A stretch of DNA of 64,000 nucleotides from IMG/VR virus record IMGVR_UViG_3300032268_000832, positions 124,001 to 188,000 of that record. One strand, given 5' to 3'. The translations under genes and the position numbers were made by a program. This document shows, piece after piece, positions 3,952 through 63,694 of the stretch. The stretch's first letter is position 1; every line of letters begins with the position of its first letter. The notes beneath the pieces were generated by a model. The model did no database searches. It was not told the DNA's origin and saw only the letters and a list, made by a program, of their open reading frames with translations.

Positions 3952-4269
3952 ATGGCAGAATACTACGATAGATATAAATCATTTAGAAATAACTCTGGGG
4001 TTGAACCAATCCCAGGTATTACAATACCTTTTTCAAGTTCAGATAAATCGGTTGTTTATAAAAAAGGGGAAAGTAGACTTGACAAAATAAGTAATGTTTA
4101 TTATAATAACCCGTACAGTGGTTGGTTAATAATGCAAGCTAACCCAGAATTTGGTGGTTTAGAATTTAACATACCAGATGGTGCTGTTATTAGAGTACCA
4201 TTTCCTTTTAACGAAGCGATAAGTCGTTACTCAACCCAAGTTTTAAATTATAAACAATTATATGGATAA
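3952..4269 (+). CDS. Baseplate wedge gp53/LysM-like (tail X-like) protein
   Basis: YKKGESRLDKISNVYYNNPYSGWLIMQANP...IPDGAVIRVP matches the LysM-like gp53/gpX pattern; 105 aa, between the tube-like and hub genes. Confidence 0.7.
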   Translation: MAEYYDRYKSFRNNSGVEPIPGITIPFSSSDKSVVYKKGESRLDKISNVYYNNPYSGWLIMQANPEFGGLEFNIPDGAVIRVPFPFNEAISRYSTQVLNYKQLYG

Positions 4270-7200: not shown

Positions 7201-10200
7201 TAATTTTTATGATAATAGACAATCATCGATTGCAGAAAAATATGTTAGAGGTTTATTGTTTTTAAACACATTACCGTTTAAAATATATGAAACTGGTAAC
7301 GTTGTCAATAACCCAAGTGGTACAGTAAAAAATAATAAAAACAATCCTTTTCAAGTACCTGAAATACGACATTTATTTGACATAAACGCTGGTTTTATAC
7401 ATACACCTAAATTATGGGTAGCCTATGTTGGTGGTTTATTGTGGTGGTTATCTGAAGAAGACCCAAAAGTTTCTGGAACTAAAATAATTGGTGGTGGTAG
7501 AGGTAAGACGGACCCTATTATTTGGAGAAAAGATTGTGGAAATGATTCAGGTAATTGGGCGTGTAAACCTACTAAAAATCAATATTTACCTAAAATGTTA
7601 ATGTTAGACCCTGAAGATATTGAAAGTGATAGTATACTACTTAATTTACCTAGACAAGTACAAGATAAATTTAAAGAAGTATTTTTTGAATTTATTAATG
7701 GTGAAGGTGAAACGTCATTTACTAACATAGCGTCTAAATTAGAAATTTACGATGGTACTGGGTTAGGATTTTGTAATTTAGTTAATAGATTTTCACAACC
7801 AGATTTACCAAATACTTTTATAAAAAAAACAAATGTTTCTAGTAATTACGTAAAAGGTAGTGACATAACAGATAATTTTAAAAATTATGATAATTATAAT
7901 GTTATTTTACCTGTTTATAGTGATATAGGTGGTGCAGAGTATTTAAGTTCAATATATTTGGAATTAAAAGATGATTCAGATATTGTAGGTAAATTAAAAG
8001 ACATTTTTAAAGAAGAATTAATAATTGTAAACACTGGTTATAAAATTTGGAATCCAAAAAAATATGCTCAATACAGACAAGGTGTTACAATAAAAAAAGA
8101 TGTTTATGGTGAATATTTTAAAACGTTTACAGAAGAAATAAAAGCTTTAACTGAAGGTACGACAATACAAGGTGAGGAAGAAAAACAACTAAATGAAGTT
8201 TTCGGTATGAGTAATAAAAACGACATTAAATTAATGTTGTATAAACACTGTAAAAACATTTATGATAAATGGGTTGGTGGTGTTCAAGATATTAACAACG
8301 TTATTTTCCAATGTGGTGATAATTCTAGAACTGATAGTAATAGAAAACAAACAGACACGGCTTTATCTGATAAATATGGTTCAGGCAAACCTAGATTAAT
8401 TGATAGTTTTAGATTTGTAACTAGGTCTTTTAGAGATATTGGTGACGAATTATTTATCGACCCTAGACCTGTTGAAGAGCAAATATCAGATTTTCCTAAC
8501 ACATCTAGTTATAGTGTAATTAGTGGTTTATTAAATGATAATAAATTTGAGTTTCACTCGTTACCAACTTTTATCAATTATAGAGATGATAAAATGTTAG
8601 AATCTGTTTTTACACCGCAAGAATATAATAATTCAATAACATCATGCGGTCCAACATTTGTTTGTGTTTATACAGGACAACATTCGAAAAGTTTAGATAT
8701 TAAATCTGGAAGATACCCAAATGATGGTTTTGATATGCGCTGTAATTCAACAACAATTCCAGACGATTTTAAAAACGCCTTACAACCATATGAGGACCCA
8801 GTTGCTGTTTTTGAGGTTAATTATTCGCAGCAAAATCAAAATATATTTAAAGACATAACTTTGGACCAAAGCGAATTTTCTGAAACTGAAGAATCTTTAA
8901 AGATTGTACAAGATATATCTATGAACGGGTTTGAAAATAAACCAACATATGCTGGTCAAAACATGTATAATATATATGGTGTTAGAAGTTATAGTGCTGA
9001 AATAGAAATGTTAGGGAATCCAATGATTCAACCTATGATGTATTTTCAATTAAATAACATACCAATGTTCCATGGTGCTTATATGATTATAAGAACTAGA
9101 CATAATATTAAACCTAATCACATGACAACATGGTTTACTGGTAGTAGGATTAGAGCTATTGAAACACCATTATTTGATGTTGCCGATGCGTATATGAGTT
9201 TAATCGAAACTTTAAACTTATCTGAAGTTAAGGGTGGTTCTACTACAGTTAGAGGAACTGGAGGTATGGTATTTGGTCAAAATTGTGGTGAGTTTAAATT
9301 AACTAAACCTATTGTAGATGGCGCTGAAGGTTTTTATAAAAGTAAACCAATTAGAGATTTAGTTGCAATTGTTGAAAGTAGAGGTGATTATAACGCTTAT
9401 AATAATGGTATTGCTGGTTCTAAAGGTACAGGAAACTATATACCATCACAAATGACCGTTTCTCAAATAAAATCAGCACAAGCAAAAACAGGTAACGATA
9501 GAATATTTGCAGTTGGTAAATATCAATTAATACCTAAAACTTTTGACACCATGGTAAAAACTTTAGGGTTTTCTGATAGTACAGTTTTCAATGCTGAAAA
9601 CCAAGAGAAAGCTGGTGAATGGTTAATATTAAAAGGAGCTGGTTATAGAAATGGTTTAATAAACTATTTCAAAACAGGTAGTTTGGGTAAAGAAAAAGAT
9701 TTACAAAACGCCATAACTGATTTAGCGTTAGAATTTGCATCTTTTCCATCTTATTATGGTGTAACTACTTCACAAGCGGCCTCTAGAGTTAACCCAATTG
9801 GTTATAATTCAAAAACAGCTTTATACGGTGGTTCAGCTGGAAATGCGGCGTCTGCTGTTTTTTGTGCATACGATGTTGCTGAAGCTTTAATTGAAACTTG
9901 GAAAAATTATAATCCTAATAAAACACCAGAATTTACTTTAGAAAAATTAAAAAATACGTCAACAATACAAACAGATAACGATAATTCTATAAAATTAACA
10001 GCGAATGATAAATCAACAGCTATTATTATGGGTGATTCAACTGTGGGTGTGATTAATTCTGTACCTAATGGTTTACAAAAAAATAAAATAGACATTTCTT
10101 TTAATAAAGTTGGTGAAACTGTTAATTGGTTAATCAGTAAATTGAAAGAATTTGGTAAAGATGGTAAAAAATATGGTAATACTAAATACGTTTTTGTGTC

Positions 10201-10513
10201 AATAGGTACAAATGATGGTTATGTTGTAAGTGATAGTAGTAAAAAGAAAATTAGTGAATTAAATGAATTGATAAAAAAAATATACCCAAATGCTAAAAGA
10301 GTTGTAATACCAGGTACTTACGGTTGGGGTAATGTAAATGATAAAACCAAACAGAATCAAGATAATTATTATAAAATATTTACTGATTTAGGGTTTACTT
10401 ATCAATATCCAAACGCTAGTGCTTTGGCGTCTACGGATGCTAAAGCTCATGATTCAAAATCTGATTGGTTTGTTAAATCAACTAAAAAAATTGTTGATAT
10501 AAAAAATGCGTAA
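4262..10513 (+). CDS. Giant baseplate hub protein (gp27/gp44-like) with C-terminal lysozyme-like and SGNH-hydrolase domains
   Basis: Hub-like N-terminus (FGITNIDI..PVIKIDFVDVKG..YPMFELEVKGYYG) and hub C-terminal motif YSAEIEMLGNPMIQP..FHGAYMIIRTRHNI..MTTWFTG. Then lysozyme-like LVAIVESRGDYNAYN..AVGKYQLIPKT..FNAENQEKA and SGNH-like IIMGDST..SIGTND..DAKAH. Confidence 0.65.
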   Translation: MDNQPKIGCRFGTGTGDRTKIIDPNAFYGETNSSRNIPVRTEDLTISVKLTTTKKSRTTIATSEDENTVVKEQKGATINFIEGSDINGKKVLTTKYTQLTTVFDKDEFNPETFGITNIDIDYNTSYTPVIKIDFVDVKGSSIFQNEESLTQDNSQNKYTTFFEFPYPMFELEVKGYYGQPVTYCLHMTKFNSKFNSQTGNFEISCEFIGYTYALLSDMLVGVLKVIHLTNIGETIFNNYNTERTDKGKQPILNLVELRKKIADISEEIQKAAATSSESKDIVSFQESNNLLSSLNLNLANLNDQFSITKKDNTTETTEYSFVVMDNTPFSNEKNANYNAINAEIKETIKKYNDLKINGLSINENEFASPTIITELTLDKLEPDYDLQIGIYKDASEIESFKKDLKNYIKNNFNLASNVTFRAFDLRSRYKILEIQKSLSETSLKDANRALAIQIKDKVAVTLGFEPTVRNMVEIFTNLIEVFMETIWTVSNKAENNVKRKELLQTAFGQDLNKSDYTEKINYWPWPDYREKDSKTNAYVDTYLGSCPELKNNISDIDELVFIDDLLKAFLTANKQQKESDLLNAGDETLFIPTNPLDTKVFGVSGNPYAKKDIINTQQALRTVLVRAMTFLGYSNDQDYLTAGEDGEIQTMAKLEARMLYDALLNPTVKSLFNKIEQDNIKKTIGKISGSDRYVIGETTRGDYYYNYVNKEDGGLLNDFKLLPIGFDIEGEDLETAYQSEPFARTYIEQDKLREYASSGKIFLTNYGGGLNALGSDSVDNAKSNDGGIYIEIKQPSDIIPTTTESLYDTNLKTEMVLDLKALKEDSIASAGFNVFGGNYGISDYSNINFGEEFKTSQPKSMFIFYEQNSILNGLGLSRKASKNLKSDYDFNKTGNINLSNTYEERNIDIQSILETGKYKGSYAKPLHKDYGSNWSLSRNMDSSDVSYPFISQYLDISDGRRKTISLFGSKFYYFQKNNVINFYDNRQSSIAEKYVRGLLFLNTLPFKIYETGNVVNNPSGTVKNNKNNPFQVPEIRHLFDINAGFIHTPKLWVAYVGGLLWWLSEEDPKVSGTKIIGGGRGKTDPIIWRKDCGNDSGNWACKPTKNQYLPKMLMLDPEDIESDSILLNLPRQVQDKFKEVFFEFINGEGETSFTNIASKLEIYDGTGLGFCNLVNRFSQPDLPNTFIKKTNVSSNYVKGSDITDNFKNYDNYNVILPVYSDIGGAEYLSSIYLELKDDSDIVGKLKDIFKEELIIVNTGYKIWNPKKYAQYRQGVTIKKDVYGEYFKTFTEEIKALTEGTTIQGEEEKQLNEVFGMSNKNDIKLMLYKHCKNIYDKWVGGVQDINNVIFQCGDNSRTDSNRKQTDTALSDKYGSGKPRLIDSFRFVTRSFRDIGDELFIDPRPVEEQISDFPNTSSYSVISGLLNDNKFEFHSLPTFINYRDDKMLESVFTPQEYNNSITSCGPTFVCVYTGQHSKSLDIKSGRYPNDGFDMRCNSTTIPDDFKNALQPYEDPVAVFEVNYSQQNQNIFKDITLDQSEFSETEESLKIVQDISMNGFENKPTYAGQNMYNIYGVRSYSAEIEMLGNPMIQPMMYFQLNNIPMFHGAYMIIRTRHNIKPNHMTTWFTGSRIRAIETPLFDVADAYMSLIETLNLSEVKGGSTTVRGTGGMVFGQNCGEFKLTKPIVDGAEGFYKSKPIRDLVAIVESRGDYNAYNNGIAGSKGTGNYIPSQMTVSQIKSAQAKTGNDRIFAVGKYQLIPKTFDTMVKTLGFSDSTVFNAENQEKAGEWLILKGAGYRNGLINYFKTGSLGKEKDLQNAITDLALEFASFPSYYGVTTSQAASRVNPIGYNSKTALYGGSAGNAASAVFCAYDVAEALIETWKNYNPNKTPEFTLEKLKNTSTIQTDNDNSIKLTANDKSTAIIMGDSTVGVINSVPNGLQKNKIDISFNKVGETVNWLISKLKEFGKDGKKYGNTKYVFVSIGTNDGYVVSDSSKKKISELNELIKKIYPNAKRVVIPGTYGWGNVNDKTKQNQDNYYKIFTDLGFTYQYPNASALASTDAKAHDSKSDWFVKSTKKIVDIKNA

Positions 10514-10530
10514 ATTAAAAATATTTTTAG

Positions 10531-10538
10531 TATATTTG
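10531..10538 (+). promoter_or_regulatory. Bacteroidota-type -7 box (TATATTTG)
   Basis: TAGTATATTTGCA ending 4 nt before ATG 10543; matches TAnnTTTG. Confidence 0.55.
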
Positions 10539-10542
10539 CAAT

Positions 10543-12615: not shown

Positions 12616-12745
12616 TTTGTTATATTGTTATTTTTTTAGTATATTTGTATATAAAAGAATTTAAAAATATAAAAAAACGTATAAAATAACGATAAAATTT
12701 TTAATTGTAAACACTTGACTTTTATTATTTTTGTTAGTATATTTG
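12616..12745 (+). promoter_or_regulatory. Tandem Bacteroidota-type promoters for the SSB/replication operon
   Basis: TTTG(12616-19)-N20-TATATTTG(12640-47) and TTGACT(12715-20)-N17-TATATTTG(12738-45). Confidence 0.7.
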
Positions 12746-12790
12746 TATAAGTTTAATATTAGTAAATAACGTAAATTATATATATTTAAA

Positions 12791-21218: not shown

Positions 21219-21605
21219 ATGGCCAACGGAGTATACATAAACATTAATTACCCCTTCAAAGATAGTCCTAAAGGGTTTTTCTTAGACTTAACGGAAACTG
21301 ATAACAAAGCGGTTAAAGCTGATTTGTTACACTTACTATTAACTAGAAAAGGACAAAGACTCTATAACCCAGAATTTGGGACTAGTTTATTAGAATACAT
21401 ATACGAACCCTATGACGGTTTAACATTTAATGATGTTAAAAACGAAATAGAAACATCGGTTAAAAAATACTTACCACAAGTTAGGTTAAATGATTTGACA
21501 GTAGAACCATCACCTTTGAATGAATATGCTGTTTTAGTTACAATAGATTACACAATAACAGATGATATATTTGAATCATCTGACTTAATACAAATAAATT
21601 TATAA
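21219..21605 (+). CDS. Baseplate wedge protein gp25-like
   Basis: LLHLLLTRKGQRLYNPEFGTSLLEYIYEP..IETSVKKYLPQVRL. Confidence 0.9.
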   Translation: MANGVYININYPFKDSPKGFFLDLTETDNKAVKADLLHLLLTRKGQRLYNPEFGTSLLEYIYEPYDGLTFNDVKNEIETSVKKYLPQVRLNDLTVEPSPLNEYAVLVTIDYTITDDIFESSDLIQINL

Positions 21606-21606
21606 A

Positions 21607-23427
21607 ATGGCAAACCAAGGAATAAATTACGGTTACAGAAACTTTGCAGACATAAGAAGCGGTTTAGTCGATATGGCTAGACAATATTACCCAGATATTT
21701 TTAATGATTTTAATGATGCGTCTGTAGGTATGATGTTATTAGAATTAAATGCAGCTGTTGGTGATATGCTTTCTTTTAACACTGATAGAATGTTTCAAGA
21801 AACTCAAATAGATTATGCACAGCAAACTAAATCCGTTTTATCTATGGCTAGAACGTTTGGTTTAAAAATTCCTGGTAAAAGACCATCTGTAACAATAGTC
21901 GATTTTAGTGTTACAGTTCCAGTTCTAGGTGATTCATTTGACATTTCATACGCACCAATCATTAACGCTGGTTCTCAAGTTACAGGTGCTGGTAAAATAT
22001 TTGAAAATTTATACGATATAGATTTTTCAAATCCATTCAACACCAATGGTATACCTAACAGATTAATTATACCAAACTTTAATTCAAATGGAACTCTTAT
22101 AAATTATACTCTAACTAAAAGAGAAATAGTTACAAATGGTTTTACTAGAATCTTTAAAAAAGTAATCAATATTTCAGATGTAAGACCATTTTTAGAAGTA
22201 ATTTTACCAGAAGATAATGTTTTATCAATAGATTCAATTATTACCTTAGATGGTACTAATATAAACACAATACCATCATTAAGTCAGTTTTCAAACCAAA
22301 GTCTTAGATGGTATGAAGTTGATGCGTTAGCTGAAAATAAAGTTTTTGTTGAGGATTATAATAAAATAACTGATAATTCAGGTGTAAAACCAGGTAAATG
22401 GATTACAGTTGATAAAAAATTTATTACTGAATATACCGATTTAGGTTTTACAAAAATAATATTTGGTTCTGGTACTAAAGACACTAGTAGTTTATGTGAT
22501 TTTGATTCAAACATTCCTTTAGTTAATCAAATAGGTGATTTTATAAATAATTTCTCTTTAGGTCAAACACCAACAGCAAACACAACGATGTTTATTAAAT
22601 ATAGAGTTGGTGGTGGTTCAGATACAAATGTTGGACCTAATGTTTTAAAGAGTGTTGGTTTATTAAACTTTACAATAAATGGTGCTAATAAAAATACAAA
22701 TTTAGCTGTTAAAAACTCTTTAACTGTAAATAATTCATTCCCAGCACTTGGTGGTAGAAATGCACCTAGCGTTGATGAAATTAGATACATGACAAAATAT
22801 AACTTTGCATCACAGAATAGAGCGGTTACCATTAAGGATTACCAAGCTATTATTTCTAAAATGCCGAGTCAATTCGGGGTACCATTCAGAATGGGTGTAA
22901 TGGAAGAACAAAACAAAATTAAAATTTACACAATAGGTTTAGACCAGTTTAATAAATTGAATAACAATTCAACTAGCGCGCTAAGAGATAATATGGCAAC
23001 ATATTTATCAGATTTTAGAATGATGAATGATTACGTTCAAATAACTGATGGTAAAATCATAAACTTAAGTTTTGAAATAGATTTATATATCGATAAAAAA
23101 CAACCTCAAGCACAGATTATTTCTGAAGTTATTAACAATGTTACTACTTATTTAGATGTCAATAAATATGATATGGGTGATAATGTTTATTTATCTCCTA
23201 TGATTGAAACAATTAATAATGTTGGTGGTGTTTTAAACGTAATTGACGTAAGGGTTTATAACAAAGTAGGTGAGGGTAAATATAGTTTAAATGAAATTTC
23301 ACAACCATATTTAGACACTGAAACTAGACAAATAGATATCAGTGGTAAATATACATTATTCGGAGAACCGACTTCAATGTTTGAAATAAAATATCCAACA
23401 ACAGATATTATGGTTAGGGTTAAATAA
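21607..23427 (+). CDS. Baseplate wedge protein gp6 / baseplate J-like
   Basis: DFNDASVGMMLLELNAAVGDMLSF..SVLSMARTFG, IIFGSG, YRVGGG..NVG, QNRAVTIKDY. Confidence 0.9.
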   Translation: MANQGINYGYRNFADIRSGLVDMARQYYPDIFNDFNDASVGMMLLELNAAVGDMLSFNTDRMFQETQIDYAQQTKSVLSMARTFGLKIPGKRPSVTIVDFSVTVPVLGDSFDISYAPIINAGSQVTGAGKIFENLYDIDFSNPFNTNGIPNRLIIPNFNSNGTLINYTLTKREIVTNGFTRIFKKVINISDVRPFLEVILPEDNVLSIDSIITLDGTNINTIPSLSQFSNQSLRWYEVDALAENKVFVEDYNKITDNSGVKPGKWITVDKKFITEYTDLGFTKIIFGSGTKDTSSLCDFDSNIPLVNQIGDFINNFSLGQTPTANTTMFIKYRVGGGSDTNVGPNVLKSVGLLNFTINGANKNTNLAVKNSLTVNNSFPALGGRNAPSVDEIRYMTKYNFASQNRAVTIKDYQAIISKMPSQFGVPFRMGVMEEQNKIKIYTIGLDQFNKLNNNSTSALRDNMATYLSDFRMMNDYVQITDGKIINLSFEIDLYIDKKQPQAQIISEVINNVTTYLDVNKYDMGDNVYLSPMIETINNVGGVLNVIDVRVYNKVGEGKYSLNEISQPYLDTETRQIDISGKYTLFGEPTSMFEIKYPTTDIMVRVK

Positions 23428-23490: not shown

Positions 23491-23838
23491 ATGAGTTGTA
23501 ATTGTAAAACAAAAAATTATCCAACAAATCAAAAATCTTTAAATAAAACATTAACTAAAAATAATACAAATATTGTTCTTAGAATATTTGCCTTCAGTTT
23601 AGGATTATTGTTATTACCAATAATAATGATGGCTGTAATATGGTTTATGTTTGAATTATTAATGTTGAACAAAGAAATTGATATGAAAAAAATAGCCAAT
23701 ATGATGACTTCAAAAATAAAACCATTTAACGAAGATTATGAAGACGATTATGATGAAGAAGATGATGATGATGAATTTACAGAAGAAAACTATGAGATGT
23801 TAGACGTAGAAGAAATAACACCAATAACAAGCAAATAA
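23491..23838 (+). CDS. Small membrane protein with acidic C-terminus
   Basis: MSCNCK start, hydrophobic IFAFSLGLLLLPIIMMAVIWFMFELLML, D/E-rich tail. Confidence 0.6.
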   Translation: MSCNCKTKNYPTNQKSLNKTLTKNNTNIVLRIFAFSLGLLLLPIIMMAVIWFMFELLMLNKEIDMKKIANMMTSKIKPFNEDYEDDYDEEDDDDEFTEENYEMLDVEEITPITSK

Positions 23839-23839
23839 A

Positions 23840-26800
23840 ATGTCAAATAACAGTATAAGAATAAGAACAACAACAGACAATAAGGATAAATTTGTCAAAG
23901 TAAAATTAGACCAAGAATTTGATTTTATTGAAGTTTTATCACTTAAAATCACACAAGAAGAAGTTTATAGAAATTTTTGTGCTGATTATGGTGTTGTTGT
24001 TGGTAGAGTGTTTATAAATAATGGGTTTGGTATCCCTAATGCTAGGGTTAGTATTTTTATACCTATAGATGATATAGATAAAAATGACCCAATACTAAAA
24101 GGGTTGTATCCTTATGAGCTAGTTACCGATAAAGATATAGATGGTAAGAGATATAACCTTCTACCAAAAAATAGTGAAACTGACAATGATTGTTTCACAC
24201 CAGTTGGTACTTTTCCAAACAAAAGAGAAGTTTTAGACGACCCAGAAATGGGTCATGTTTATTGTAAATATTATAAATTTACCACATCGACAAACTATGC
24301 TGGTGATTATATGATATTTGGCGTACCAGTTGGTAATTATACTGTTCATGTTGACGCGGATATTTCTGATATAGGTATAGCCTCACAGAGACCTTACGAT
24401 AGCATTAGTCAAGGAGCACCTATCCAAATGTTTGATAGTCCAACAAAATTTAAAGGCGGTACTAATTTAGATAAACTAGTACAAGTAAAAACAGTAAATG
24501 CTGGTGTTAATGTTCAACCATTTTGGGGTTCTGTTGAAAATTGTGAAATCGGTATAAGTAGAATAGATTTAGACTTAAATTACACTATAACACCTTCAGC
24601 TATCTTTATGGGTGGTGCCTTTGGTGATAGCGATAAAAATAGTGTTAACAAAAATTGTAGACCTAGAAAAAGCATGGGTAAAATTTGTGAACAAAACACT
24701 AGTGAAGGAACTATTGAAATGATACGAAAAACCCTAGATGGTAAAATAGAAAAATTAGATATTGAGGGTGGTCGTTTAATGGATGAAAATGGTTCATGGG
24801 CCTATCAAGTACCTATGAACTTAGATTATTATTATACAAACGAATTTGGTGATTTAGTATTATCAGAAGACCCAAATAAAGGTATACCTACTAGAGCTAA
24901 TGTTAGGTTTAAAATTGCTATGGATGAAAGTGGTGGTTTAGGTAGACTTAGAACAAAAGCGAATTATCTAATCCCACACAACCCAACAGCTGGTAAACCA
25001 GATGAGATTGATTATGAATTTGGTGAATTAACCAAAGACAGTAGTTTTAGAGATTTATATTGGAATAAAATTTATTCAGTTTCTAACTTCATATCTAGAT
25101 ATCAAAAAAATAAAAGTTTTAGCGCAGTTAAAAATAGAAATTTTGTTGGGTTAAAAGATGTTGATGATTGTGTTGGAGATAAATTACCTGTACCTTTTAA
25201 TAGGGTTAATACAGTGTTTAACCCATTGTTTTTTATTATATGTTTAATTATGAAGATTATCGAGTTTATAATGTTTATTATAAATTCGACTATTATTGTT
25301 ATAGTAAATGCAATTGTAAGTGTAATTAGAAGTATTTTAGGTCTTTTATGTAGTGCGCATAGAAAATTAAAGAAAATTGGTATTAGATTTTTTAAAATTT
25401 TCTGTACTTTATATGATAGGGTTAACTATGTCCCATGTTTATACGCTAAATGTCCTTATGAGGAATCTTTTGTTTATTACTTTGCGCCAGGTTGTTCAGG
25501 AAAAGGTAAAGATAGAATAGATGACGATGGCGTACCAGTAAAAACAACTTTAGGGTTATTATCTAATTGTGTTGCTGCTTCTATGGCAGAAGCTCTTAAC
25601 TTATTTCAATTTGATTTTTATAATGATTGGTTAAATGGTTCGTTATATTATTATTTAATAAAATTTAAAAAAAGACGTAGACAAGAAAAATATTGTAATT
25701 ATGATTGTTCTGGTGGTGATTGTAAATCAAGTATGCTTATAGACACATGTTATACCGATGAAAATAGTTATAAGAGTACAAGTTTTAGAGAAGGTGTTGT
25801 TAAAAAATACAACAACGAATTATTCTACGCCCCATCTAACAAAACAGCAACAGTTAAATTATACGCAACTGAAATTATTAATCTAGGTTCTGTTTTTAAT
25901 TGTGATTGGCAAGGAGTACCTAAAATTCAAAATTATCTAGTACCAACAACATATATTATCCCACCAATAATCGATGAATATTCTGATGAAAACCCTAGTT
26001 GGACAGAAACTAGTGGACAAGTAGATATTGGGCGTGGTTTTGGTGGTGTATTTTTTGATATATCATGTGCTGGTTTATCTTCAGATAAACAACAATGCTT
26101 AAATATAAGGCATGCATGTGAATTTGGTGTTGACTTAGACGAAATAGATGAAACTGATAATGGAGTGGTTTTACAACCAAATCACATTATAGGTTCTGCT
26201 GAAATAAATTCAGAATATGGTAAATACGTTAGAGATGTTTTCTTTTTATTAAATAATGTGACAAATAATATAAACGTAAATTTAAACCCATCACCAACAA
26301 CTAATTTTAATACAAATAATGTGGGTGACTACAATTTCGCATTAATTGGCGACAATGGTAGTGATTATGTTAATTTTAGAGGTTATTTGGATAATAGTTC
26401 GTTTTCGCAACCTAAACATTCTTATTATTTCTATTTTGGGTCAACTCCAGGTTCAACTGGTTTAGACAAAATGAATAACAATTTTTTCACTAAATGTTTT
26501 CCAACATTAACCGTTGAATTTTTTATTCGTATTGATAATACTGATGCTATTAGTGCTAACAATGTTAATGATGGTAGTGCTACTTTTACAATAGTATCTG
26601 GCGTTGGTCCGTTTACTTATATTGTAAGTGGTCCTAATGGGTATAATTCTAGTGGAATATTAACAGAACCAAATCTAACACAATCGTTAAATGGTTTAGC
26701 ACAAGGTTCTTATATCATTAACGTTACAGACTCTTCTGGCGTTTCTATTTCACAATCATTTGAAATTTCAGGACCAACACCTTTATATGCATCGGCAATT

Positions 26801-28306
26801 GTTAGTGAAAATAACACAGCAATTTCATCACCGTATAATGGGCAAATAACAATAACATCTGTTGGTGGTGGTAATGGTACTTATACTGCATGGTTATACA
26901 ATTCTAGTAATTCATTAGTATCGATAGGAACGTGTCAAGCAAACGGTGCTTCATCAAATCCAACTTCAGTTACCCAAACACCTATAAGTTTTTGTGGCTT
27001 ACCTTCGGATATATTAACAAATACTAGTTCAACACATAGTGGACATACTGGTTACTATATTATTGTGAAAGATACAAGTTCACCACAACAACAATATATT
27101 ATATACGATTTAAATGTTGGTGGTGTTACTGGATTAAATATTGTAATAACTTCTGTAAACCCAACTTGTTTTGACTCAAGTAATGGTAAAATAACCATGG
27201 CAATTACAGGTGGTATTGAACCATATTTAATTGAAACAACATTAAATAACGAACCATTGTTCAATGGTTTAACTTCTAATATTTTAAGTCAAGGTATTTA
27301 CACAACAACTGTTACTGATAGTTCATCACCTGCTCAAATAGTGACAAGAACCACAACTCTTTTACCTACTGAACCAGAAATGAAACTTGAACCAGACTTA
27401 GTTTTATTACCACAACAGTGTGACCCTAATAATTACACAATCTATTTAGATGTAATTAACGGTGGTCAAAATAATCTAAATCAAAATTACACACAAGTAA
27501 ATGGTGTTACTCGTTGTTATTTACAATTTAATTATGATGGTAATGAAAATAGTGAGGGTAACCCAATTTGGACTTCACCACTACCGTTTACATATTTAAA
27601 TAACCCTACAGCTTCTGGACCTTTTAGAGTTAAAGTGACAATACCTAGAAATAGTATAACAGCAGGTGTTGCTATTAGGTTATCTAACTCACAAGGTACA
27701 TGTGGTAGTAATTATAGTGAAGATGGGACAGATTTTGATGTTTCACAAATGAAATTACCACCAAACGTATTATCTGTTGATGTTAATAATGTGGATAATA
27801 CTAGACAATGTGAGATTAATTTTGTTACATTCAAATTTAATATAAGTCATTTAAATGTGTTTGCAACATATAGAGCACCATATATTTTGGAATATCAAAT
27901 AGCTGGACAAACTGGTGTGTTCGGAACACCGACAATATATCAAACATCTATAACACAAAACCAACAACCTATTAGAATTTCGGTACCAAGTAATACATCA
28001 AATTTACCAAGTAATAAATGTAGTATTAAATTTAGAGTAACAGATAATGTAAATTGTCAATCAACATGGTTAACGATAAGTAATATAACTCTACCAACAA
28101 ATTCAATAACACCAAACTGGTCTCAAAGTACTGTAAGTGGTCAATGTATTAGAAGATATAGTTTATCTGGAGGTATCGCACCATATACGGTAACTAATGG
28201 TTTCTTACCAAACACACCATACGTAGTGTCATGTCAACCAAACGCTACTAGTGTTAGTGGATTAGATAATGTTGGTTGTCCATTTAATTTTACATATACA
28301 CAATAA
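23840..28306 (+). CDS. Large Cys-rich putative virion protein with internal hydrophobic segment and SprB-like repeats
   Basis: N-terminal prealbumin/carboxypeptidase-regulatory-like motif (VVGRV..GIPNARVSIF..TNYAGDYMIFGVPVGNYTVHV), hydrophobic stretch ~25215-25350, SprB-like repeats ~26550-27350; located in the baseplate operon. Confidence 0.55.
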   Translation: MSNNSIRIRTTTDNKDKFVKVKLDQEFDFIEVLSLKITQEEVYRNFCADYGVVVGRVFINNGFGIPNARVSIFIPIDDIDKNDPILKGLYPYELVTDKDIDGKRYNLLPKNSETDNDCFTPVGTFPNKREVLDDPEMGHVYCKYYKFTTSTNYAGDYMIFGVPVGNYTVHVDADISDIGIASQRPYDSISQGAPIQMFDSPTKFKGGTNLDKLVQVKTVNAGVNVQPFWGSVENCEIGISRIDLDLNYTITPSAIFMGGAFGDSDKNSVNKNCRPRKSMGKICEQNTSEGTIEMIRKTLDGKIEKLDIEGGRLMDENGSWAYQVPMNLDYYYTNEFGDLVLSEDPNKGIPTRANVRFKIAMDESGGLGRLRTKANYLIPHNPTAGKPDEIDYEFGELTKDSSFRDLYWNKIYSVSNFISRYQKNKSFSAVKNRNFVGLKDVDDCVGDKLPVPFNRVNTVFNPLFFIICLIMKIIEFIMFIINSTIIVIVNAIVSVIRSILGLLCSAHRKLKKIGIRFFKIFCTLYDRVNYVPCLYAKCPYEESFVYYFAPGCSGKGKDRIDDDGVPVKTTLGLLSNCVAASMAEALNLFQFDFYNDWLNGSLYYYLIKFKKRRRQEKYCNYDCSGGDCKSSMLIDTCYTDENSYKSTSFREGVVKKYNNELFYAPSNKTATVKLYATEIINLGSVFNCDWQGVPKIQNYLVPTTYIIPPIIDEYSDENPSWTETSGQVDIGRGFGGVFFDISCAGLSSDKQQCLNIRHACEFGVDLDEIDETDNGVVLQPNHIIGSAEINSEYGKYVRDVFFLLNNVTNNINVNLNPSPTTNFNTNNVGDYNFALIGDNGSDYVNFRGYLDNSSFSQPKHSYYFYFGSTPGSTGLDKMNNNFFTKCFPTLTVEFFIRIDNTDAISANNVNDGSATFTIVSGVGPFTYIVSGPNGYNSSGILTEPNLTQSLNGLAQGSYIINVTDSSGVSISQSFEISGPTPLYASAIVSENNTAISSPYNGQITITSVGGGNGTYTAWLYNSSNSLVSIGTCQANGASSNPTSVTQTPISFCGLPSDILTNTSSTHSGHTGYYIIVKDTSSPQQQYIIYDLNVGGVTGLNIVITSVNPTCFDSSNGKITMAITGGIEPYLIETTLNNEPLFNGLTSNILSQGIYTTTVTDSSSPAQIVTRTTTLLPTEPEMKLEPDLVLLPQQCDPNNYTIYLDVINGGQNNLNQNYTQVNGVTRCYLQFNYDGNENSEGNPIWTSPLPFTYLNNPTASGPFRVKVTIPRNSITAGVAIRLSNSQGTCGSNYSEDGTDFDVSQMKLPPNVLSVDVNNVDNTRQCEINFVTFKFNISHLNVFATYRAPYILEYQIAGQTGVFGTPTIYQTSITQNQQPIRISVPSNTSNLPSNKCSIKFRVTDNVNCQSTWLTISNITLPTNSITPNWSQSTVSGQCIRRYSLSGGIAPYTVTNGFLPNTPYVVSCQPNATSVSGLDNVGCPFNFTYTQ

Positions 28307-28312
28307 TATAAC

Positions 28313-30100
28313 ATGAGTACAGAAAGAACAAAACAAAGATTAGGTAATCAAACATCAAAACAATCGGTAAATACCGATACATACCTCAATATAAACATTG
28401 AAGGTAAAGAAAGGTTATTACCAACGAATCAAATAAACCATATTTTAAATGTTGCTGAACAATTTAATAAAGAAAGACAATCTTGTAGTTTTTATAAGGT
28501 TTTAGGTACCATTAACTCTACGGTTAGTAATTGTTTGTTTAATCTAACTGACACTAGTATAAACAATTCATTTACATATGCTGCGTTTAACACATTACCA
28601 TTTTTAAGTAGGTCATATCCTCAAGATTTAGATTTAAACGATGAGGAAGACTTAACTTATTCTAAATCTATTGATTATTACTTAAAAGAAAGAGATGGTT
28701 GGTTTGGTTATTATGACCCAGATGTTTCTAAAAAATCATTGTGTAGTTTTTTTGATATGGAACCAAAAAGAGAAAGGTTTTCATTTTTATTAGATTATAA
28801 CCCATATAAGAGTACAAATAGCTCAGATAGTGTTAAGAACTGGGAGTTAACAATAACATACCCATCTTCATCAGACACAGGACATACCATGGTAAGAAAT
28901 GGTTTATTGGTTGTTGATTCTAAACCAATAATACTTTCTGAAAGACAAATGGTTTGTTTTGCAGTTACATGTAAACACAATTTATCTTCTGGTGATGTAG
29001 TTGAAATTACCAACACTAATGGATATAATGGTGAACATGTTGTTTATAGTGTAGGTTTAGAAAATGGTGATTTAAAAGATTATTATTTTGTAATAGACTT
29101 ACCAGCAAACGGCACCATCAGTAACAACACTAGAATAAATAAAATAGTTGATAATGTTAAGGTTAATTATTATTTTAGAAAATTTTCTAAAATAAAAACT
29201 AGAAATTCAAATATAATAGAAACGGATGATTATGAGACTTACCAAGCTGGTTTTAGTGAGAATTTTTATAATGACCCTATTATCCAATTTGTTTTTAATG
29301 AAGAAATAGATGTTTCTGGGTTAAAAGATAATTTAGGGAGACCATTATCTGAATTTTTTCTAACGATTTTTAAAACAAATAGTAATAATTTATTTACTAG
29401 TGTTAAATCTGGTATAGAAGCACCTTTCATTTCTAATTTGAATAATAGTGATGTTTTAACATATTTGAGAGATATTCCAGTAATACAAAAAATACATAAT
29501 GGTGGTAATTTACCTTATATTTCACATAACCCATTAGAAACATTAAATGGGTTACCAGATAGTTTTTATGGTGATATTGTTGAATATAACAACACAACAT
29601 TATTAGAAACTGTTTTAGCTGACGTACAACATAGGTTTAATACTATCAATAGAGAACAAACTAATAATATTCAAGAATATTTTTCAACAACAACTAGTTC
29701 AACTCAATTAGCTCAAACTAGGTCTTTAAATTTAGGGCCTAGACAAGAAGGGTATTTTTATAAACCTCACCATTCTATTAAAATAAGAAATTTTTCTAAT
29801 TACATAGAAGAAGCCGATAGTTTAGTAGACGGTATTCCAACGTATGCAACACTTAGAAATGATGGTAAATACGTTTGGAGAGATTTACTTTCAATAGGTT
29901 TTAATGATGGTGATGATAATAGTTTAGATTACCCATTCTTAAATGGTTCGCATTATAGATATCAAAATTATTGTTTTAATTTAAAAAGACAAGACCCTTA
30001 CGCGCAATGGGGTTTATTATATACAAAATTCCCTTCAGACGCGACAGGTGATAGAATAACAGATAGATTCACAGTAAAAAGTTCAGACGATGTTTGCTAA
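28313..30100 (+). CDS. Putative virion structural protein
   Basis: 595 aa within the baseplate/tail block; HNLSSGDVVEI beta-barrel-like motif. Confidence 0.5.
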   Translation: MSTERTKQRLGNQTSKQSVNTDTYLNINIEGKERLLPTNQINHILNVAEQFNKERQSCSFYKVLGTINSTVSNCLFNLTDTSINNSFTYAAFNTLPFLSRSYPQDLDLNDEEDLTYSKSIDYYLKERDGWFGYYDPDVSKKSLCSFFDMEPKRERFSFLLDYNPYKSTNSSDSVKNWELTITYPSSSDTGHTMVRNGLLVVDSKPIILSERQMVCFAVTCKHNLSSGDVVEITNTNGYNGEHVVYSVGLENGDLKDYYFVIDLPANGTISNNTRINKIVDNVKVNYYFRKFSKIKTRNSNIIETDDYETYQAGFSENFYNDPIIQFVFNEEIDVSGLKDNLGRPLSEFFLTIFKTNSNNLFTSVKSGIEAPFISNLNNSDVLTYLRDIPVIQKIHNGGNLPYISHNPLETLNGLPDSFYGDIVEYNNTTLLETVLADVQHRFNTINREQTNNIQEYFSTTTSSTQLAQTRSLNLGPRQEGYFYKPHHSIKIRNFSNYIEEADSLVDGIPTYATLRNDGKYVWRDLLSIGFNDGDDNSLDYPFLNGSHYRYQNYCFNLKRQDPYAQWGLLYTKFPSDATGDRITDRFTVKSSDDVC

Positions 30101-30944
30101 TAAATACAAATTAAATATAAATAATTTCAATACGGGTAGTACTGAACAATACATAACAATCCCAATTGGGACTCAATTTCAAATTGTTGATAATTCAGAA
30201 TTGATTGACAGGGTGTTTGTTGCAACAGAAGTAGAAAATTCTATTAACAAAATATTGGATTATGATAGAGTTAGATACATGCCACTAACACAAAACGATG
30301 AATTAGTTTCAGAAATAACTTATGATTTAAGTTTATTAGATTCAAATAATATATACACTAGTTTTTATGGTGGTATTGGTTTTCAATATGATGATGTTAA
30401 ATTTAGAAAGAATGCTTTTAGCAACAGTTTTTTAAGGTTAGGTATTTATGATACTGATGACCCTATGACACAAAATTTAGTGGGTTATACTACATTGTAT
30501 AGTAGACTTAGAACGGTTGATTTGGAAAGTGGAACTACGACTACGATAGCTGGTTTACCTAAACCAATAAATCAAATACCGATTAATTTTACGGTTGAAA
30601 ACCCTATTATTAATAAAAGAGGTTTTTCAGAAGGTTTCCACATTTATTATTATAAAGATTCTTTAAATATTGGTGAAAGTAAATATTTATATATAAAAGC
30701 TAATTTTAATAATGCCAAGACAGGTAAGTCAGTTAATTTAATGGTTAAAAACGCGCCACAAACAGTTAGCAACTTAGTGCATGAATTATATACTAGAATA
30801 ATAATAACTAGAACAACAACTGGTTATTATTATAAATTTGATGAAACATATCAAGGTAATACGACAACACCAAACATAACAAACAATATAACAATAGACG
30901 GTAATAGTGTTACTGTTAAATTATACCAAGTAGCTGCATTGTAA
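30090..30944 (+). CDS. Putative virion structural protein
   Basis: 284 aa, overlapping or coupled with neighbours in the tail block. Confidence 0.5.
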   Translation: MFANKYKLNINNFNTGSTEQYITIPIGTQFQIVDNSELIDRVFVATEVENSINKILDYDRVRYMPLTQNDELVSEITYDLSLLDSNNIYTSFYGGIGFQYDDVKFRKNAFSNSFLRLGIYDTDDPMTQNLVGYTTLYSRLRTVDLESGTTTTIAGLPKPINQIPINFTVENPIINKRGFSEGFHIYYYKDSLNIGESKYLYIKANFNNAKTGKSVNLMVKNAPQTVSNLVHELYTRIIITRTTTGYYYKFDETYQGNTTTPNITNNITIDGNSVTVKLYQVAAL

Positions 30945-46010: not shown

Positions 46011-46042
46011 ATTGTAAATATAATTTTTTATTAGTATATTTG
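46011..46042 (+). promoter_or_regulatory. Bacteroidota-type promoter for primase
   Basis: ATTG(46011-14)-N20-TATATTTG(46035-42); ATG 4 nt downstream. Confidence 0.65.
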
Positions 46043-46046
46043 CTAG

Positions 46047-46988: not shown

Positions 46989-47020
46989 TTTGCATTTGGT
47001 ATAAAAATTTAGTATATTTG
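46989..47020 (+). promoter_or_regulatory. Bacteroidota-type promoter
   Basis: TTTG(46989-92)-N20-TATATTTG(47013-20). Confidence 0.7.
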
Positions 47021-47036
47021 TAATAAACTAAAAATT

Positions 47037-63663: not shown

Positions 63664-63694
63664 AAAAAAGTAGTATATTTGCCAAAAATAATTA

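What the first reader, a model, noticed from the sequence alone, without database searches (positions are those of the whole stretch)
26550..28290. SprB-like (gliding adhesin) repeats in a phage tail-region protein
Repeated units NDGSATFTIVSGVGPFTY..LNGLAQGSYIINVTDSSG, NGQITITSVGGGNGTY, NPTCFDSSNGKITMAITGGIEPY..GIYTTTVTDS and LSGGIAPY..DNVGC fit the SprB repeat pattern (C...G.I....GG..PY.Y...L..G.Y.V.V.D..GC). Known: SprB is the mobile surface adhesin of Flavobacterium gliding. Inference: the phage captured host adhesin modules for attachment to host exopolysaccharide, surfaces or the gliding/T9SS machinery.
Basis: partly seen in the sequence, partly recalled or inferred. Interest (0 to 1): 0.65.

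Follow-up and report, generated by a model that had tools for sequence, protein, structure and literature searches.

The report
SprB-type Ig repeats on phage baseplate protein
A large protein encoded next to the baseplate genes of an uncultured 300-kb phage, whose host is probably a Bacteroidota bacterium, ends in six antibody-like domains, four of the SprB-repeat type common in Bacteroidota surface proteins; this is a real but fairly ordinary case of a phage carrying Ig-like adhesion domains, not a recent theft of the gliding adhesin.

Summary
Window 26550-28290 is the C-terminal 40% of one ORF (23840-28306, +, 1488 aa).

- **SprB match.** Pfam SprB (PF13573) scores above its curated cut-off at aa 1104-1129 and weakly at aa 908-932. 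It hits 89 of 90 relatives.
- **Fold.** An AlphaFold model (pLDDT 92.9) shows six beta-sandwich domains.
- **Reciprocal tests.** A profile built from the phage domains finds genuine tandem SprB repeats in 175 of 201 sampled Bacteroidia genomes, against 3 of 151 Bacilli. The nearest ESM-Atlas shapes are all SprB-repeat proteins.
- **Context.** The gene follows gp25-like and gp6-like baseplate genes in an order kept across distant relatives. Those relatives keep the N-terminal part but carry other C-termini.
- **Host.** It is probably Bacteroidota: the phage encodes a protein with a T9SS sorting domain, has no Shine-Dalgarno sites, and carries TAnnTTTG-type promoter motifs.

Not supported: recent capture from a host (25-39% identity to the best bacterial repeats; the array is conserved in at least 911 phage proteins) and any link to gliding (no T9SS sorting domain in this protein, no signal peptide).

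It is most likely a baseplate-anchored protein whose Ig-like arm makes weak contacts with the host surface. This is a new member of a known kind.

The parts
23840..28306 (+). Whole gene, 1488 aa (P0001): a conserved baseplate-cassette protein with an N-terminal anchor part and a C-terminal six-domain beta-sandwich arm.
   Evidence: ORF list and translation. At least 911 homologues at E <= 0.001, the 120 best listed at 44-98% identity and mostly near full length.
23840..25219 (+). N-terminal module, aa 1-460, the most conserved part (median 72.5% identity in the family; 33-47% in distant gut and rumen relatives). It contains a transthyretin / carboxypeptidase-regulatory-like sandwich at about aa 47-250.
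25205..25372 (+). Very hydrophobic stretch, aa 456-511, modelled as one 50-residue helix (aa 462-511). Its role is unexplained: a buried core helix, an oligomerisation helix or a membrane hairpin.
   Evidence: Kyte-Doolittle 19-residue mean up to 2.83. AF2 helix 462-511 at pLDDT about 90.
25397..26479 (+). Cys-rich alpha/beta region, aa 520-880, with no recognisable family. It has invariant cysteines, including C619, C623 and C628.
   Evidence: No Pfam, PHROG or PDB sequence match.
26516..26773 (+).
   Evidence: Pfam SprB 15.8 bits, E 0.011. hhalign to D3 98%, E 4e-14. AF2 model.
26774..27121 (+).
   Evidence: hhalign D1~D2 93% and D2~D3 91%. Family alignment.
27122..27367 (+). The Pfam hit lies at nt 27149-27226.
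   Evidence: PF13573 35.7 bits against a cut-off of 28; 42 bits when D1-D3 is scored alone.
27368..27700 (+). D4, aa 1177-1287: beta-sandwich of a second type.
   Evidence: AF2 model. hhalign D4~D5 91%.
27701..28057 (+). D5, aa 1288-1406: beta-sandwich related to D4. It ends in a D-N-V-x-C motif.
28058..28303 (+). With D4 it is one of the two least conserved domains (median 28.9% identity).
   Evidence: hhalign D3~D6 91.5%. Per-domain identities. Absent in 20 of 121 homologues.
21219..21605 (+). gp25-like baseplate wedge gene at the start of the conserved cassette.
   Evidence: phrog_261 E 2.6e-23 and phrog_43 E 2.5e-11. Syntenic in 7 of the 8 MAG loci.
21607..23427 (+). gp6 / baseplate-J-like wedge gene directly upstream.
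   Evidence: phrog_219 E 4.7e-19. tblastn to baseplate wedge genes of Flavobacterium phage immuto and to T4-like gp6. Syntenic.
23491..23838 (+). Small 115-aa ORF between the gp6-like gene and P0001, with a TM-like segment and an acidic tail.
28313..30944 (+). Downstream ORFs of 595 and 284 aa, of unknown function, syntenic with P0001 in most of the distant relatives.
   Evidence: tblastn synteny. No Pfam or PHROG hit above threshold.

Best explanation
P0001 is a structural protein of the baseplate periphery of an uncultured jumbo myovirus-type phage (record 306 kb) whose host is probably a Bacteroidota bacterium. Its conserved N-terminal ~880 residues hold it in the baseplate. These comprise a transthyretin-like sandwich, a long hydrophobic helix and a Cys-rich domain. 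Its C-terminal ~600 residues form an exposed arm of six Ig/FN3-like beta-sandwich domains. Four of them (D1, D2, D3, D6) are homologous to the SprB repeat (PF13573) that builds the large T9SS-secreted surface proteins of Bacteroidota.

The arm most likely acts like other phage Ig-like domains (T4 Hoc, T5 pb10, lambda gpV C-terminus). It would make weak, reversible contacts with glycans or surface proteins of the host envelope, and so aid adsorption or orient the baseplate. The fast-evolving distal domains would contribute specificity.

Shown: the domain identity, the fold, the conservation gradient, the synteny and the C-terminal module exchange. Inferred: virion location, exposure of the arm and the binding function.
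For: - **SprB identity.** Pfam match above cut-off. 89 of 90 relatives match. The phage-derived profile finds genuine tandem SprB repeats in 175 of 201 Bacteroidia genomes against 3 of 151 Bacilli. A phage D1+D3 HMM picks out 133 bacterial repeats of about 78 aa, spaced about 70-82 aa apart where measured. All 10 nearest ESM-Atlas shape clusters carry PF13573 in at least 96% of members.
- **Baseplate context.** gp25-like and gp6-like genes lie immediately upstream. The order gp25-like, gp6-like, P0001, orf595 is kept in most of 8 distant loci, with orf284 following in six.
- **Anchor plus exchangeable distal part.** Median identity falls from 72.5% (aa 1-460) to 29% (D4, D6). Gut and rumen relatives keep the N-terminus but have unrelated C-termini of 550-1450 aa with no SprB hit. 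Some relatives lack D5-D6 or D6. One near-identical relative has D3 replaced: N-terminus 99%, D1 98%, D3 56%.
- **Host.** A phage-encoded Cohesin + Por_Secre_tail protein. 0 of 47 genes have a Shine-Dalgarno core. A recurrent TAnnTTTG-containing motif sits upstream of genes. 5 of 8 distant relatives were binned with Bacteroidales.
- **Proposed role of such domains.** PMC5292684, citing Fraser et al. 2006 and 2007 and Barr et al. 2013.
Against: - There is no direct evidence that the protein is in the virion. No cultured relative exists, there is no match in 50,697 deposited phage genomes, and no PHROG family matches.
- The N-terminal part has no detectable similarity to T4 gp7 or any solved baseplate protein.
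- The complex prediction with the gp6-like protein gave no answer.
- The hydrophobic 50-residue segment is unusual for a soluble baseplate protein and could indicate a membrane location.
- No ligand is known for any SprB repeat, so binding is inferred by analogy only.
Confidence: 0.6

Rival explanations
1. The phage recently captured adhesin modules from its host's gliding adhesin SprB and uses them to bind the gliding/T9SS machinery, host exopolysaccharide or inert surfaces.
For: - The repeats are homologous to SprB repeats and are nearly restricted to Bacteroidia among the genomes sampled.
- The host is probably Bacteroidota.
- The T9SS-secreted adhesins SprB and RemA are thought to be phage receptors in F. 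johnsoniae (PMC9804748, citing Nelson 2008 and Shrivastava 2012).
Against: - Only 25-39% identity to the best bacterial repeats among 201 genomes.
- D1, D2 and D3 are each orthologous across the phage family (clade supports 0.91-0.999). The array is fixed in 100 of 121 homologues. Any acquisition therefore predates the family.
- PF13573 occurs in many cargo proteins per genome, not just SprB.
- No T9SS C-terminal domain and no signal peptide in P0001 (sequence).
- The paired cysteines of the bacterial consensus are largely lost in the phage domains.
Confidence: 0.1
2. The beta-sandwich string is only a rigid spacer or stabiliser (a strut) that sets baseplate geometry or holds another fibre, with no ligand of its own.
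For: - Strings of SprB-like Ig repeats build the rigid stem of the Aureispira GhpA grappling hook. These are among the best PDB shape matches: 9flw, 9flv, 9fly (bioRxiv 10.1101/2024.01.29.577165).
- The architecture is nearly constant in domain number.
- Large unknown ORFs downstream (1100 and 1223 aa) could be the true fibres.
Against: - The distal domains evolve fastest, and D3 is swapped between near-identical phages. This pattern is more typical of host-facing parts than of struts.
- The whole C-terminal part is replaced in relatives from other habitats.
Confidence: 0.2
3. The protein is not a virion component. It would be a membrane-anchored protein of the infected cell (hydrophobic hairpin at aa 456-506) that displays the Ig-like arm, for example for superinfection exclusion or for assembly of the baseplate at the membrane.
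For: - The hydrophobic segment scores far above the usual TM threshold.
- The neighbouring 115-aa ORF also has a TM-like segment.
- No virion evidence exists.
Against: - Tight, conserved synteny with baseplate wedge genes across very distant phages.
- The size and the modular anchor-plus-variable-tip pattern are typical of tail proteins.
- AF2 models the segment as one continuous helix (aa 462-511) at pLDDT about 90.
Confidence: 0.07

Closest known systems
SprB repeat (Pfam PF13573), as found in F. johnsoniae SprB and many other Bacteroidota T9SS cargo proteins
   Same: - Same ~78-aa beta-sandwich module with the same signature positions: G..G.I, GG..PY.Y, L..G.Y.V.V.D..GC.
- Scores above the Pfam cut-off.
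- Reciprocal profile hits.
- The nearest Atlas shapes are SprB-repeat proteins.
   Different: - Four repeats here rather than dozens.
- The host protein is a cytoplasmically made phage protein with no signal peptide and no type A or B T9SS C-terminal domain hit.
- The conserved cysteine pair is mostly lost: D1 and D2 have none, D3 keeps only the first, D6 only the last.
- D2 carries a ~35-residue insertion.
- Identity to bacterial repeats is only 25-39%.
Ig-like accessory domains on phage structural proteins (T4 Hoc, T5 pb10 C-terminal domain, lambda gpV C-terminal domain; Fraser et al. 2006/2007)
   Same: - Ig-like sandwiches appended to a conserved anchoring part.
- Direct profile hit to the pb10 Ig domain (5lxk, E 5.5e-4; 8zvi) and to a putative neck-whisker protein (9occ).
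- The proposed role is weak carbohydrate binding (PMC5292684).
   Different: - Those domains belong mostly to the I-set, FN3 and Big_2 classes and sit on capsids or tail tubes.
- Here the class is SprB-type, arranged as a six-domain arm on a baseplate-cassette protein.
Aureispira GhpA grappling hook (PDB 9flw, 9flv, 9fly, 9flp)
   Same: Strings of Ig-like repeats described as similar to SprB. They are among the top Foldseek PDB matches, E 4e-11 to 1.4e-9. They are the only solved structures cited as a framework for SprB (bioRxiv 10.1101/2024.01.29.577165).
   Different: GhpA is a 5,898-aa T9SS substrate that forms heptameric hollow stems stabilised by disulfides and glycans. None of this is shown for the phage protein.
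T4 gp7 / Mu gp48-type baseplate wedge protein (positional analogue)
   Same: A large multidomain protein encoded just after the gp6-like gene, in a cassette that starts with a gp25-like gene.
   Different: No sequence or fold similarity was detected. The prediction of an interaction with the gp6-like protein gave no answer.
Other viral SprB-repeat proteins: UniProt A0A6J5LD72 and A0A6J5LDA4 ('SprB repeat', uncultured Caudovirales phage), and an all-viral ESM-Atlas cluster of 52 members
   Same: These are phage proteins with PF13573 repeats. A0A6J5LD72 is the best BFVD shape match, E 3.9e-17. The Atlas cluster is row 3.
   Different: They are about 700 aa long and lack the 880-aa N-terminal module of this family. 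Only 16% identity over the aligned region.

Membership tests
Pfam PF13573 SprB repeat (domain family) | Profile score at or above the curated gathering cut-off (28 bits). | tested here: met
   35.7 bits for the whole protein and 42 bits for aa 893-1176, driven by D3. 37 bits in the six-frame genome search. 89 of 90 relatives hit at E <= 0.01.
Pfam PF13573 SprB repeat (domain family) | Tandem modules of about 75-80 aa that fold as beta-sandwiches. | tested here: met
   D1 (86 aa), D2 (116 aa, with an insertion) and D3 (82 aa) are contiguous, and D6 (82 aa) is terminal. AF2 all-beta model at pLDDT 92.9. Bacterial repeats recovered with the phage HMM average 78 aa and are spaced about 70-82 aa apart.
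Pfam PF13573 SprB repeat (domain family) | Conserved cysteine near the start and a G-C at the end of each repeat. | tested here: not met
   In the consensus comparison, the bacterial repeats keep both cysteines. Phage D1 and D2 have neither, D3 keeps the first and D6 keeps the last. This is a divergence within the family, not an exclusion, because the profile score is met.
Pfam PF13573 SprB repeat (domain family) | Reciprocity: a profile built from the candidate recovers accepted members. | tested here: met
   Profile A3 hits 175 of 201 Bacteroidia genomes (173 of 199 without the two unpublished genomes G183 and G097), against 3 of 151 Bacilli. The regions hit score 294-406 bits for PF13573 with 11-15 repeats each.
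SprB gliding adhesin (orthologue of F. johnsoniae SprB) | C-terminal T9SS sorting domain (type B, CHU_C/TIGR04131; or type A, Por_Secre_tail). | tested here: not met
   No PF13585 or PF18962 hit in P0001 at E <= 1. No PF13585 anywhere in the phage record. The one PF18962 hit lies in a different gene.
SprB gliding adhesin (orthologue of F. johnsoniae SprB) | Sec signal peptide and a size of several thousand residues made of dozens of repeats. | tested here: not met
   The N-terminus is polar, with no hydrophobic leader (sequence). The protein is 1488 aa with four SprB-type domains.
SprB gliding adhesin (orthologue of F. johnsoniae SprB) | Propelled along the cell surface by the gliding motor; required for gliding. 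| not testable with these tools
   This needs genetics and microscopy.
Phage Ig-like accessory domains (Fraser class) | Ig/FN3-like beta-sandwich fold. | tested here: met
Phage Ig-like accessory domains (Fraser class) | Carried by a virion structural protein and exposed on the particle. | not testable with these tools
   The only evidence is gene context: a baseplate cassette with conserved synteny.
Phage Ig-like accessory domains (Fraser class) | Appended to a more conserved core, and variable or dispensable among relatives. | tested here: met
   Conservation gradient from 72.5% to 29%. 20 of 121 relatives lack D6 or D5-D6. Distant relatives have other C-termini.
T4 gp7-like baseplate wedge protein | Sequence or fold similarity to gp7, or a predicted complex with the gp6-like protein. 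| tested here: inconclusive
   No PHROG, Pfam or PDB match. The complex prediction gave no answer. Only the gene position agrees.

The most novel reading that the evidence does not exclude
The baseplate arm uses its SprB-type domains for homotypic (Ig-to-Ig) binding to the host's own SprB-like T9SS adhesins. These adhesins are thought to be phage receptors in Flavobacterium. The phage would latch onto long, moving surface filaments and be carried or reeled to the outer membrane. This would be receptor recognition by molecular mimicry of the receptor's own repeat.
Probability: 0.06. Interest if true: 0.8.

Novelty: new member of a known kind. Interest (0 to 1): 0.35.

Why it matters
- It gives a domain map and a testable role to a hypothetical protein family with at least 911 members. 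The family belongs to a widespread, uncultured clade of 200-350 kb phages from environmental metagenomes.
- It shows that the SprB repeat is one more class of Ig-like domain used by phages, alongside I-set, FN3 and Big_2.
- The conserved baseplate cassette with an exchangeable C-terminal part marks a likely host-interaction determinant for this clade.
- The SprB-type module, the T9SS-tagged phage protein and the Bacteroidota-style expression signals together give a host prediction for phages that have no cultured representative.
- It does not reveal a new mechanism.

Tried and rejected
- **Deposited phage genomes.** tblastn of the whole protein and megablast of 12 kb against 50,697 phage genomes found no match.
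- **PHROGs.** No family for P0001 or its downstream neighbours.
- **Positional analogue in a cultured phage.** Flavobacterium phage immuto has a 1265-aa hypothetical protein after its gp6-like gene. It shows no BLASTP similarity to P0001 and no Pfam hit.
- **PDB sequence search with the N-terminal profile.** Nothing.
- **Fold searches of the N-terminal model.** Only a transthyretin/CnaB-like sandwich was recognised. The rest is unassigned, and the model is long, so it is poorly tested.
- **ESM-Atlas feature search of aa 1-880.** Only viral hypothetical clusters and generic CarboxypepD_reg clusters.
- **Domain tree of phage and bacterial repeats.** D1, D2 and D3 are each monophyletic, but the deeper order is unresolved. 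No donor or direction can be named.
- **Complex prediction of the gp6-like protein with P0001 aa 1-390.** No answer; this is evidence neither for nor against binding.
- There are therefore no expression or habitat data from reads.
- **tRNAs.** None in the window.
- **Housekeeping.** No other genetic code was needed.

Full report
**What is there.** The flagged interval 26550-28290 lies inside one long ORF, 23840-28306 on the + strand, 1488 aa (P0001). The window is bases 124001-188000 of a 306,463-bp IMG/VR virus record that CheckV estimates to be 86% complete. GC content is about 29% and nearly all genes are on one strand.

**Is it SprB-like, and beyond chance?**
- Pfam PF13573 (SprB repeat, 37 positions) scores 35.7 bits against a curated cut-off of 28 (E 6.4e-9), at aa 1104-1129. 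A second, sub-threshold match lies at aa 908-932 (15.8 bits, E 0.011). A six-frame search of the whole phage record finds the same two places and no others.
- The word search found at least 911 homologues. The 120 best are 44-98% identical, mostly 1270-1570 aa, on contigs up to 350 kb. 77 of these 120 carry a precomputed PF13573 hit.
- When the D1-D3 stretch of 90 relatives was scanned one by one, 89 matched SprB at E <= 0.01 (best 1.4e-17). No other Ig-type family came close: BiPBP_C 9, Por_Secre_tail 7, a PKD-like family 4.
- In the family alignment, the invariant and near-invariant columns of this region are exactly the SprB signature positions.

**Domain map.**
- An AlphaFold2 model of aa 880-1488, built with a 93-sequence alignment, has mean pLDDT 92.9 and is all-beta.
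- From the strand pattern and the alignment I set six domains: D1 893-978, D2 979-1094, D3 1095-1176, D4 1177-1287, D5 1288-1406, D6 1407-1488.
- Profile-profile comparison gives D1~D3 98% probability (E 4e-14), D1~D2 93%, D2~D3 91% and D3~D6 91.5%. D4~D5 scores 91%, with no link between the two groups.
D2 carries a ~35-residue insertion. D4 and D5 are a second kind of sandwich.

**Reciprocal and structural tests.**
- A profile made only from phage D1-D3 was run against 201 genomes sampled evenly from the class that contains a Prevotella MAG (Bacteroidia). 175 genomes had matches at E <= 0.001 (best 1.7e-26), usually many per genome, inside open frames of about 500-6000 aa. Two of these genomes (G183, G097) are unpublished. 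Without them the tally is 173 of 199, and no locus I used comes from them.
- The same profile against 151 genomes of the class of a Bacilli MAG matched 3, the best at 2.7e-5.
- Four of the bacterial regions hit were scanned with Pfam. They are textbook tandem SprB arrays: 11-15 repeats in 1200 aa, 294-406 bits.
- A phage D1+D3 HMM cut 133 repeats of mean length 78 aa out of twelve bacterial segments, spaced about 70-82 aa apart in the two segments checked.
- A shape search of the ESM Atlas returned ten cluster sets. All carry PF13573 in at least 96% of members. Eight are Bacteroidota proteins, most carrying T9SS sorting domains; one is purely viral and one has no recorded taxa.
- A profile search of PDB sequences picks the Ig domain of the T5 decoration protein pb10, a chain deposited as 'Ig-like domain-containing protein' (9d7z) and a putative neck-whisker protein.
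- Foldseek also lists the Aureispira GhpA grappling-hook fragments. Their authors describe GhpA as SprB-like and say no high-resolution SprB structure exists (bioRxiv 10.1101/2024.01.29.577165).
- So 'SprB repeat' and 'generic phage Ig domain' are both true.

**Context.**
- Immediately upstream are a gp25-like gene (phrog_261, E 2.6e-23), a gp6 / baseplate-J-like gene (phrog_219, E 4.7e-19) and a 115-aa ORF.
- The N-terminal alignment found eight distant relatives (33-46% identity) on long contigs binned into MAGs. Five were labelled Bacteroidales, Paludibacteraceae or Prevotella. The others were labelled Methanobacterium, Mycoplasmatota and Bacilli, and are most likely mis-binned phage contigs.
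- The gene order gp25-like, gp6-like, P0001 homologue, orf595 homologue is kept in these loci wherever the DNA held reaches, with orf284 following in six of them.
- Only a peat-derived relative has a SprB-like C-terminus. The gut and rumen relatives (1453-2356 aa) have C-terminal parts with no Pfam hit at all.
- Within the close family, median identity to P0001 falls from 72.5% (aa 1-460) through 49.5% (aa 461-879) and about 41% (D1, D2) to 29% (D4, D6).
- One relative is 99% identical in the N-terminus and 98% in D1, but only 56% in D3. That is a domain-sized replacement.
- 100 of 121 proteins have D1-D6, 12 stop after D4, 8 stop after D5, and one has a duplication.
- This is the usual pattern of a tail protein: a conserved anchor and an exchangeable, host-facing distal part.

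**Host.**
- The phage record encodes, outside the window, a Cohesin-domain protein ending in a T9SS sorting domain (PF18962, 43.8-47.7 bits against a cut-off of 27).
- None of 47 genes in the window has a GGAG/AGGA/GAGG core within 20 nt of the start. The leaders are A-rich.
- A motif TTAGTATATTTG(C/T) recurs just upstream of the SSB, primase, exonuclease and other genes. It contains TAnnTTTG, which from my own knowledge is the -7 element of Bacteroidota promoters.
- The nearest cultured phages by the gp6-like and DnaB proteins include Flavobacterium phage immuto, at about 27% identity.
- Together these point to a Bacteroidota host.

**What is not supported.**
- The best bacterial repeats in the sample are 25-39% identical to the phage domains.
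- D1, D2 and D3 each form their own clade across the phage family (support 0.91-0.999), but the phage domains do not form one clade and the deep order is unresolved.
- Any transfer is therefore old, and its direction is unknown.
- P0001 has no signal peptide and no T9SS sorting domain hit (sequence). The cysteine pair of the bacterial consensus is mostly lost in the phage domains. This may fit folding in the cytoplasm, but that is inference.
- PF13573 is a building block of many T9SS cargo proteins (PMC7073777). It carries no implication of gliding.

**Mechanism proposed.**
- The six-sandwich arm projects outward and makes weak, multivalent contacts with envelope glycans or surface proteins. 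This role has been proposed for phage Ig-like domains in general (PMC5292684 and its references to Fraser et al. and Barr et al.).
- The fast-evolving domains D3-D6 probably tune specificity.
- T9SS adhesins are thought to be receptors of Flavobacterium phages (PMC9804748). A homotypic SprB-SprB contact therefore remains an open, more novel possibility, which I rate at about 6%.

**Unexplained.**
- The hydrophobic segment at aa 456-506 has a Kyte-Doolittle mean of up to 2.83.
- The adjacent 115-aa ORF also has a TM-like segment.
- The N-terminal 250 residues are highly conserved but poorly modelled. They may need assembly partners to fold.

**Verdict.** The 'captured gliding adhesin' story is not supported. 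This is a new member of a known kind: a phage structural protein carrying Ig-like domains, here of the SprB class. Such domains are already auto-annotated in a few uncultured phage proteins. Interest is moderate to low.

Noticed in passing
window 10527-10539, 12636-12648, 12734-12746, 46031-46043, 47009-47021, 63670-63682 (+): A recurrent motif TTAGTATATTTG(C/T), containing TAnnTTTG, lies a few to about 45 nt upstream of ORF 10543, the SSB, primase and exonuclease genes and ORF 63695. There are 14 matches at up to 2 mismatches, against 6.3 +/- 2.7 expected. It is a likely phage early/middle promoter of the Bacteroidota type.
   Followed up: partly
window, 47 gene starts on the + strand: No gene has a Shine-Dalgarno core (GGAG, AGGA or GAGG) within 20 nt upstream. 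Positions -14 to -9 are A-rich. This is translation initiation of the kind seen in Bacteroidota.
   Followed up: partly
L003:1489-3228 (-) = G000:C1 about 232619-234358, outside the window: The phage encodes a protein of at least 579 aa with a Cohesin domain (36 bits) and a C-terminal T9SS sorting domain (Por_Secre_tail, 43.8-47.7 bits). It is presumably exported by the host's type IX secretion system during infection.
   Followed up: partly
window 25205-25372 (P0001 aa 456-511) and 23491-23838 (orf115): There are two strongly hydrophobic, TM-like segments inside the baseplate cassette. One is a stretch of about 50 residues in P0001 (Kyte-Doolittle mean up to 2.83, modelled as one helix). The other is in the 115-aa ORF, followed by a very acidic tail.
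   Followed up: partly
window 25241-26068 (P0001 aa 468-743): Twelve cysteines are invariant across 90 homologues: C118 and C273 upstream, and C468-C743 in this stretch, including C619-x3-C623-x4-C628. They may form a metal site or disulfides in a phage structural protein.
   Followed up: no
P0003 compared with P0001, D3 = window 27122-27367: A relative that is 99% identical in the N-terminus and 98% in D1 is only 56% identical in D3. This indicates a domain-sized recombinational replacement of the best SprB-type domain.
   Followed up: partly
L005-L012 (MAG contigs of 6-287 kb): Distant relatives of this phage clade sit in MAG bins labelled Methanobacterium, Mycoplasmatota, Bacilli, Bacteroidales, Paludibacteraceae and Prevotella sp. 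CAG:1092. They are probably jumbo-phage contigs mis-binned as bacterial or archaeal genomes.
   Followed up: partly
window 4262-10513 (+): A 2083-aa ORF with only a weak GDSL-lipase-like hit near its C-terminus (aa 1941-2026, E 0.006, below cut-off). The other giant ORFs (1301, 1100 and 1223 aa) have no family at all.
   Followed up: no
G204:C114:156107-156697 (-), just beyond L005: In the peat-derived relative, a second open frame of 1269 aa a few genes downstream also carries weak SprB-type matches (E 4e-7 and 1.2e-4). In the window's own genome only P0001 matches.
   Followed up: no
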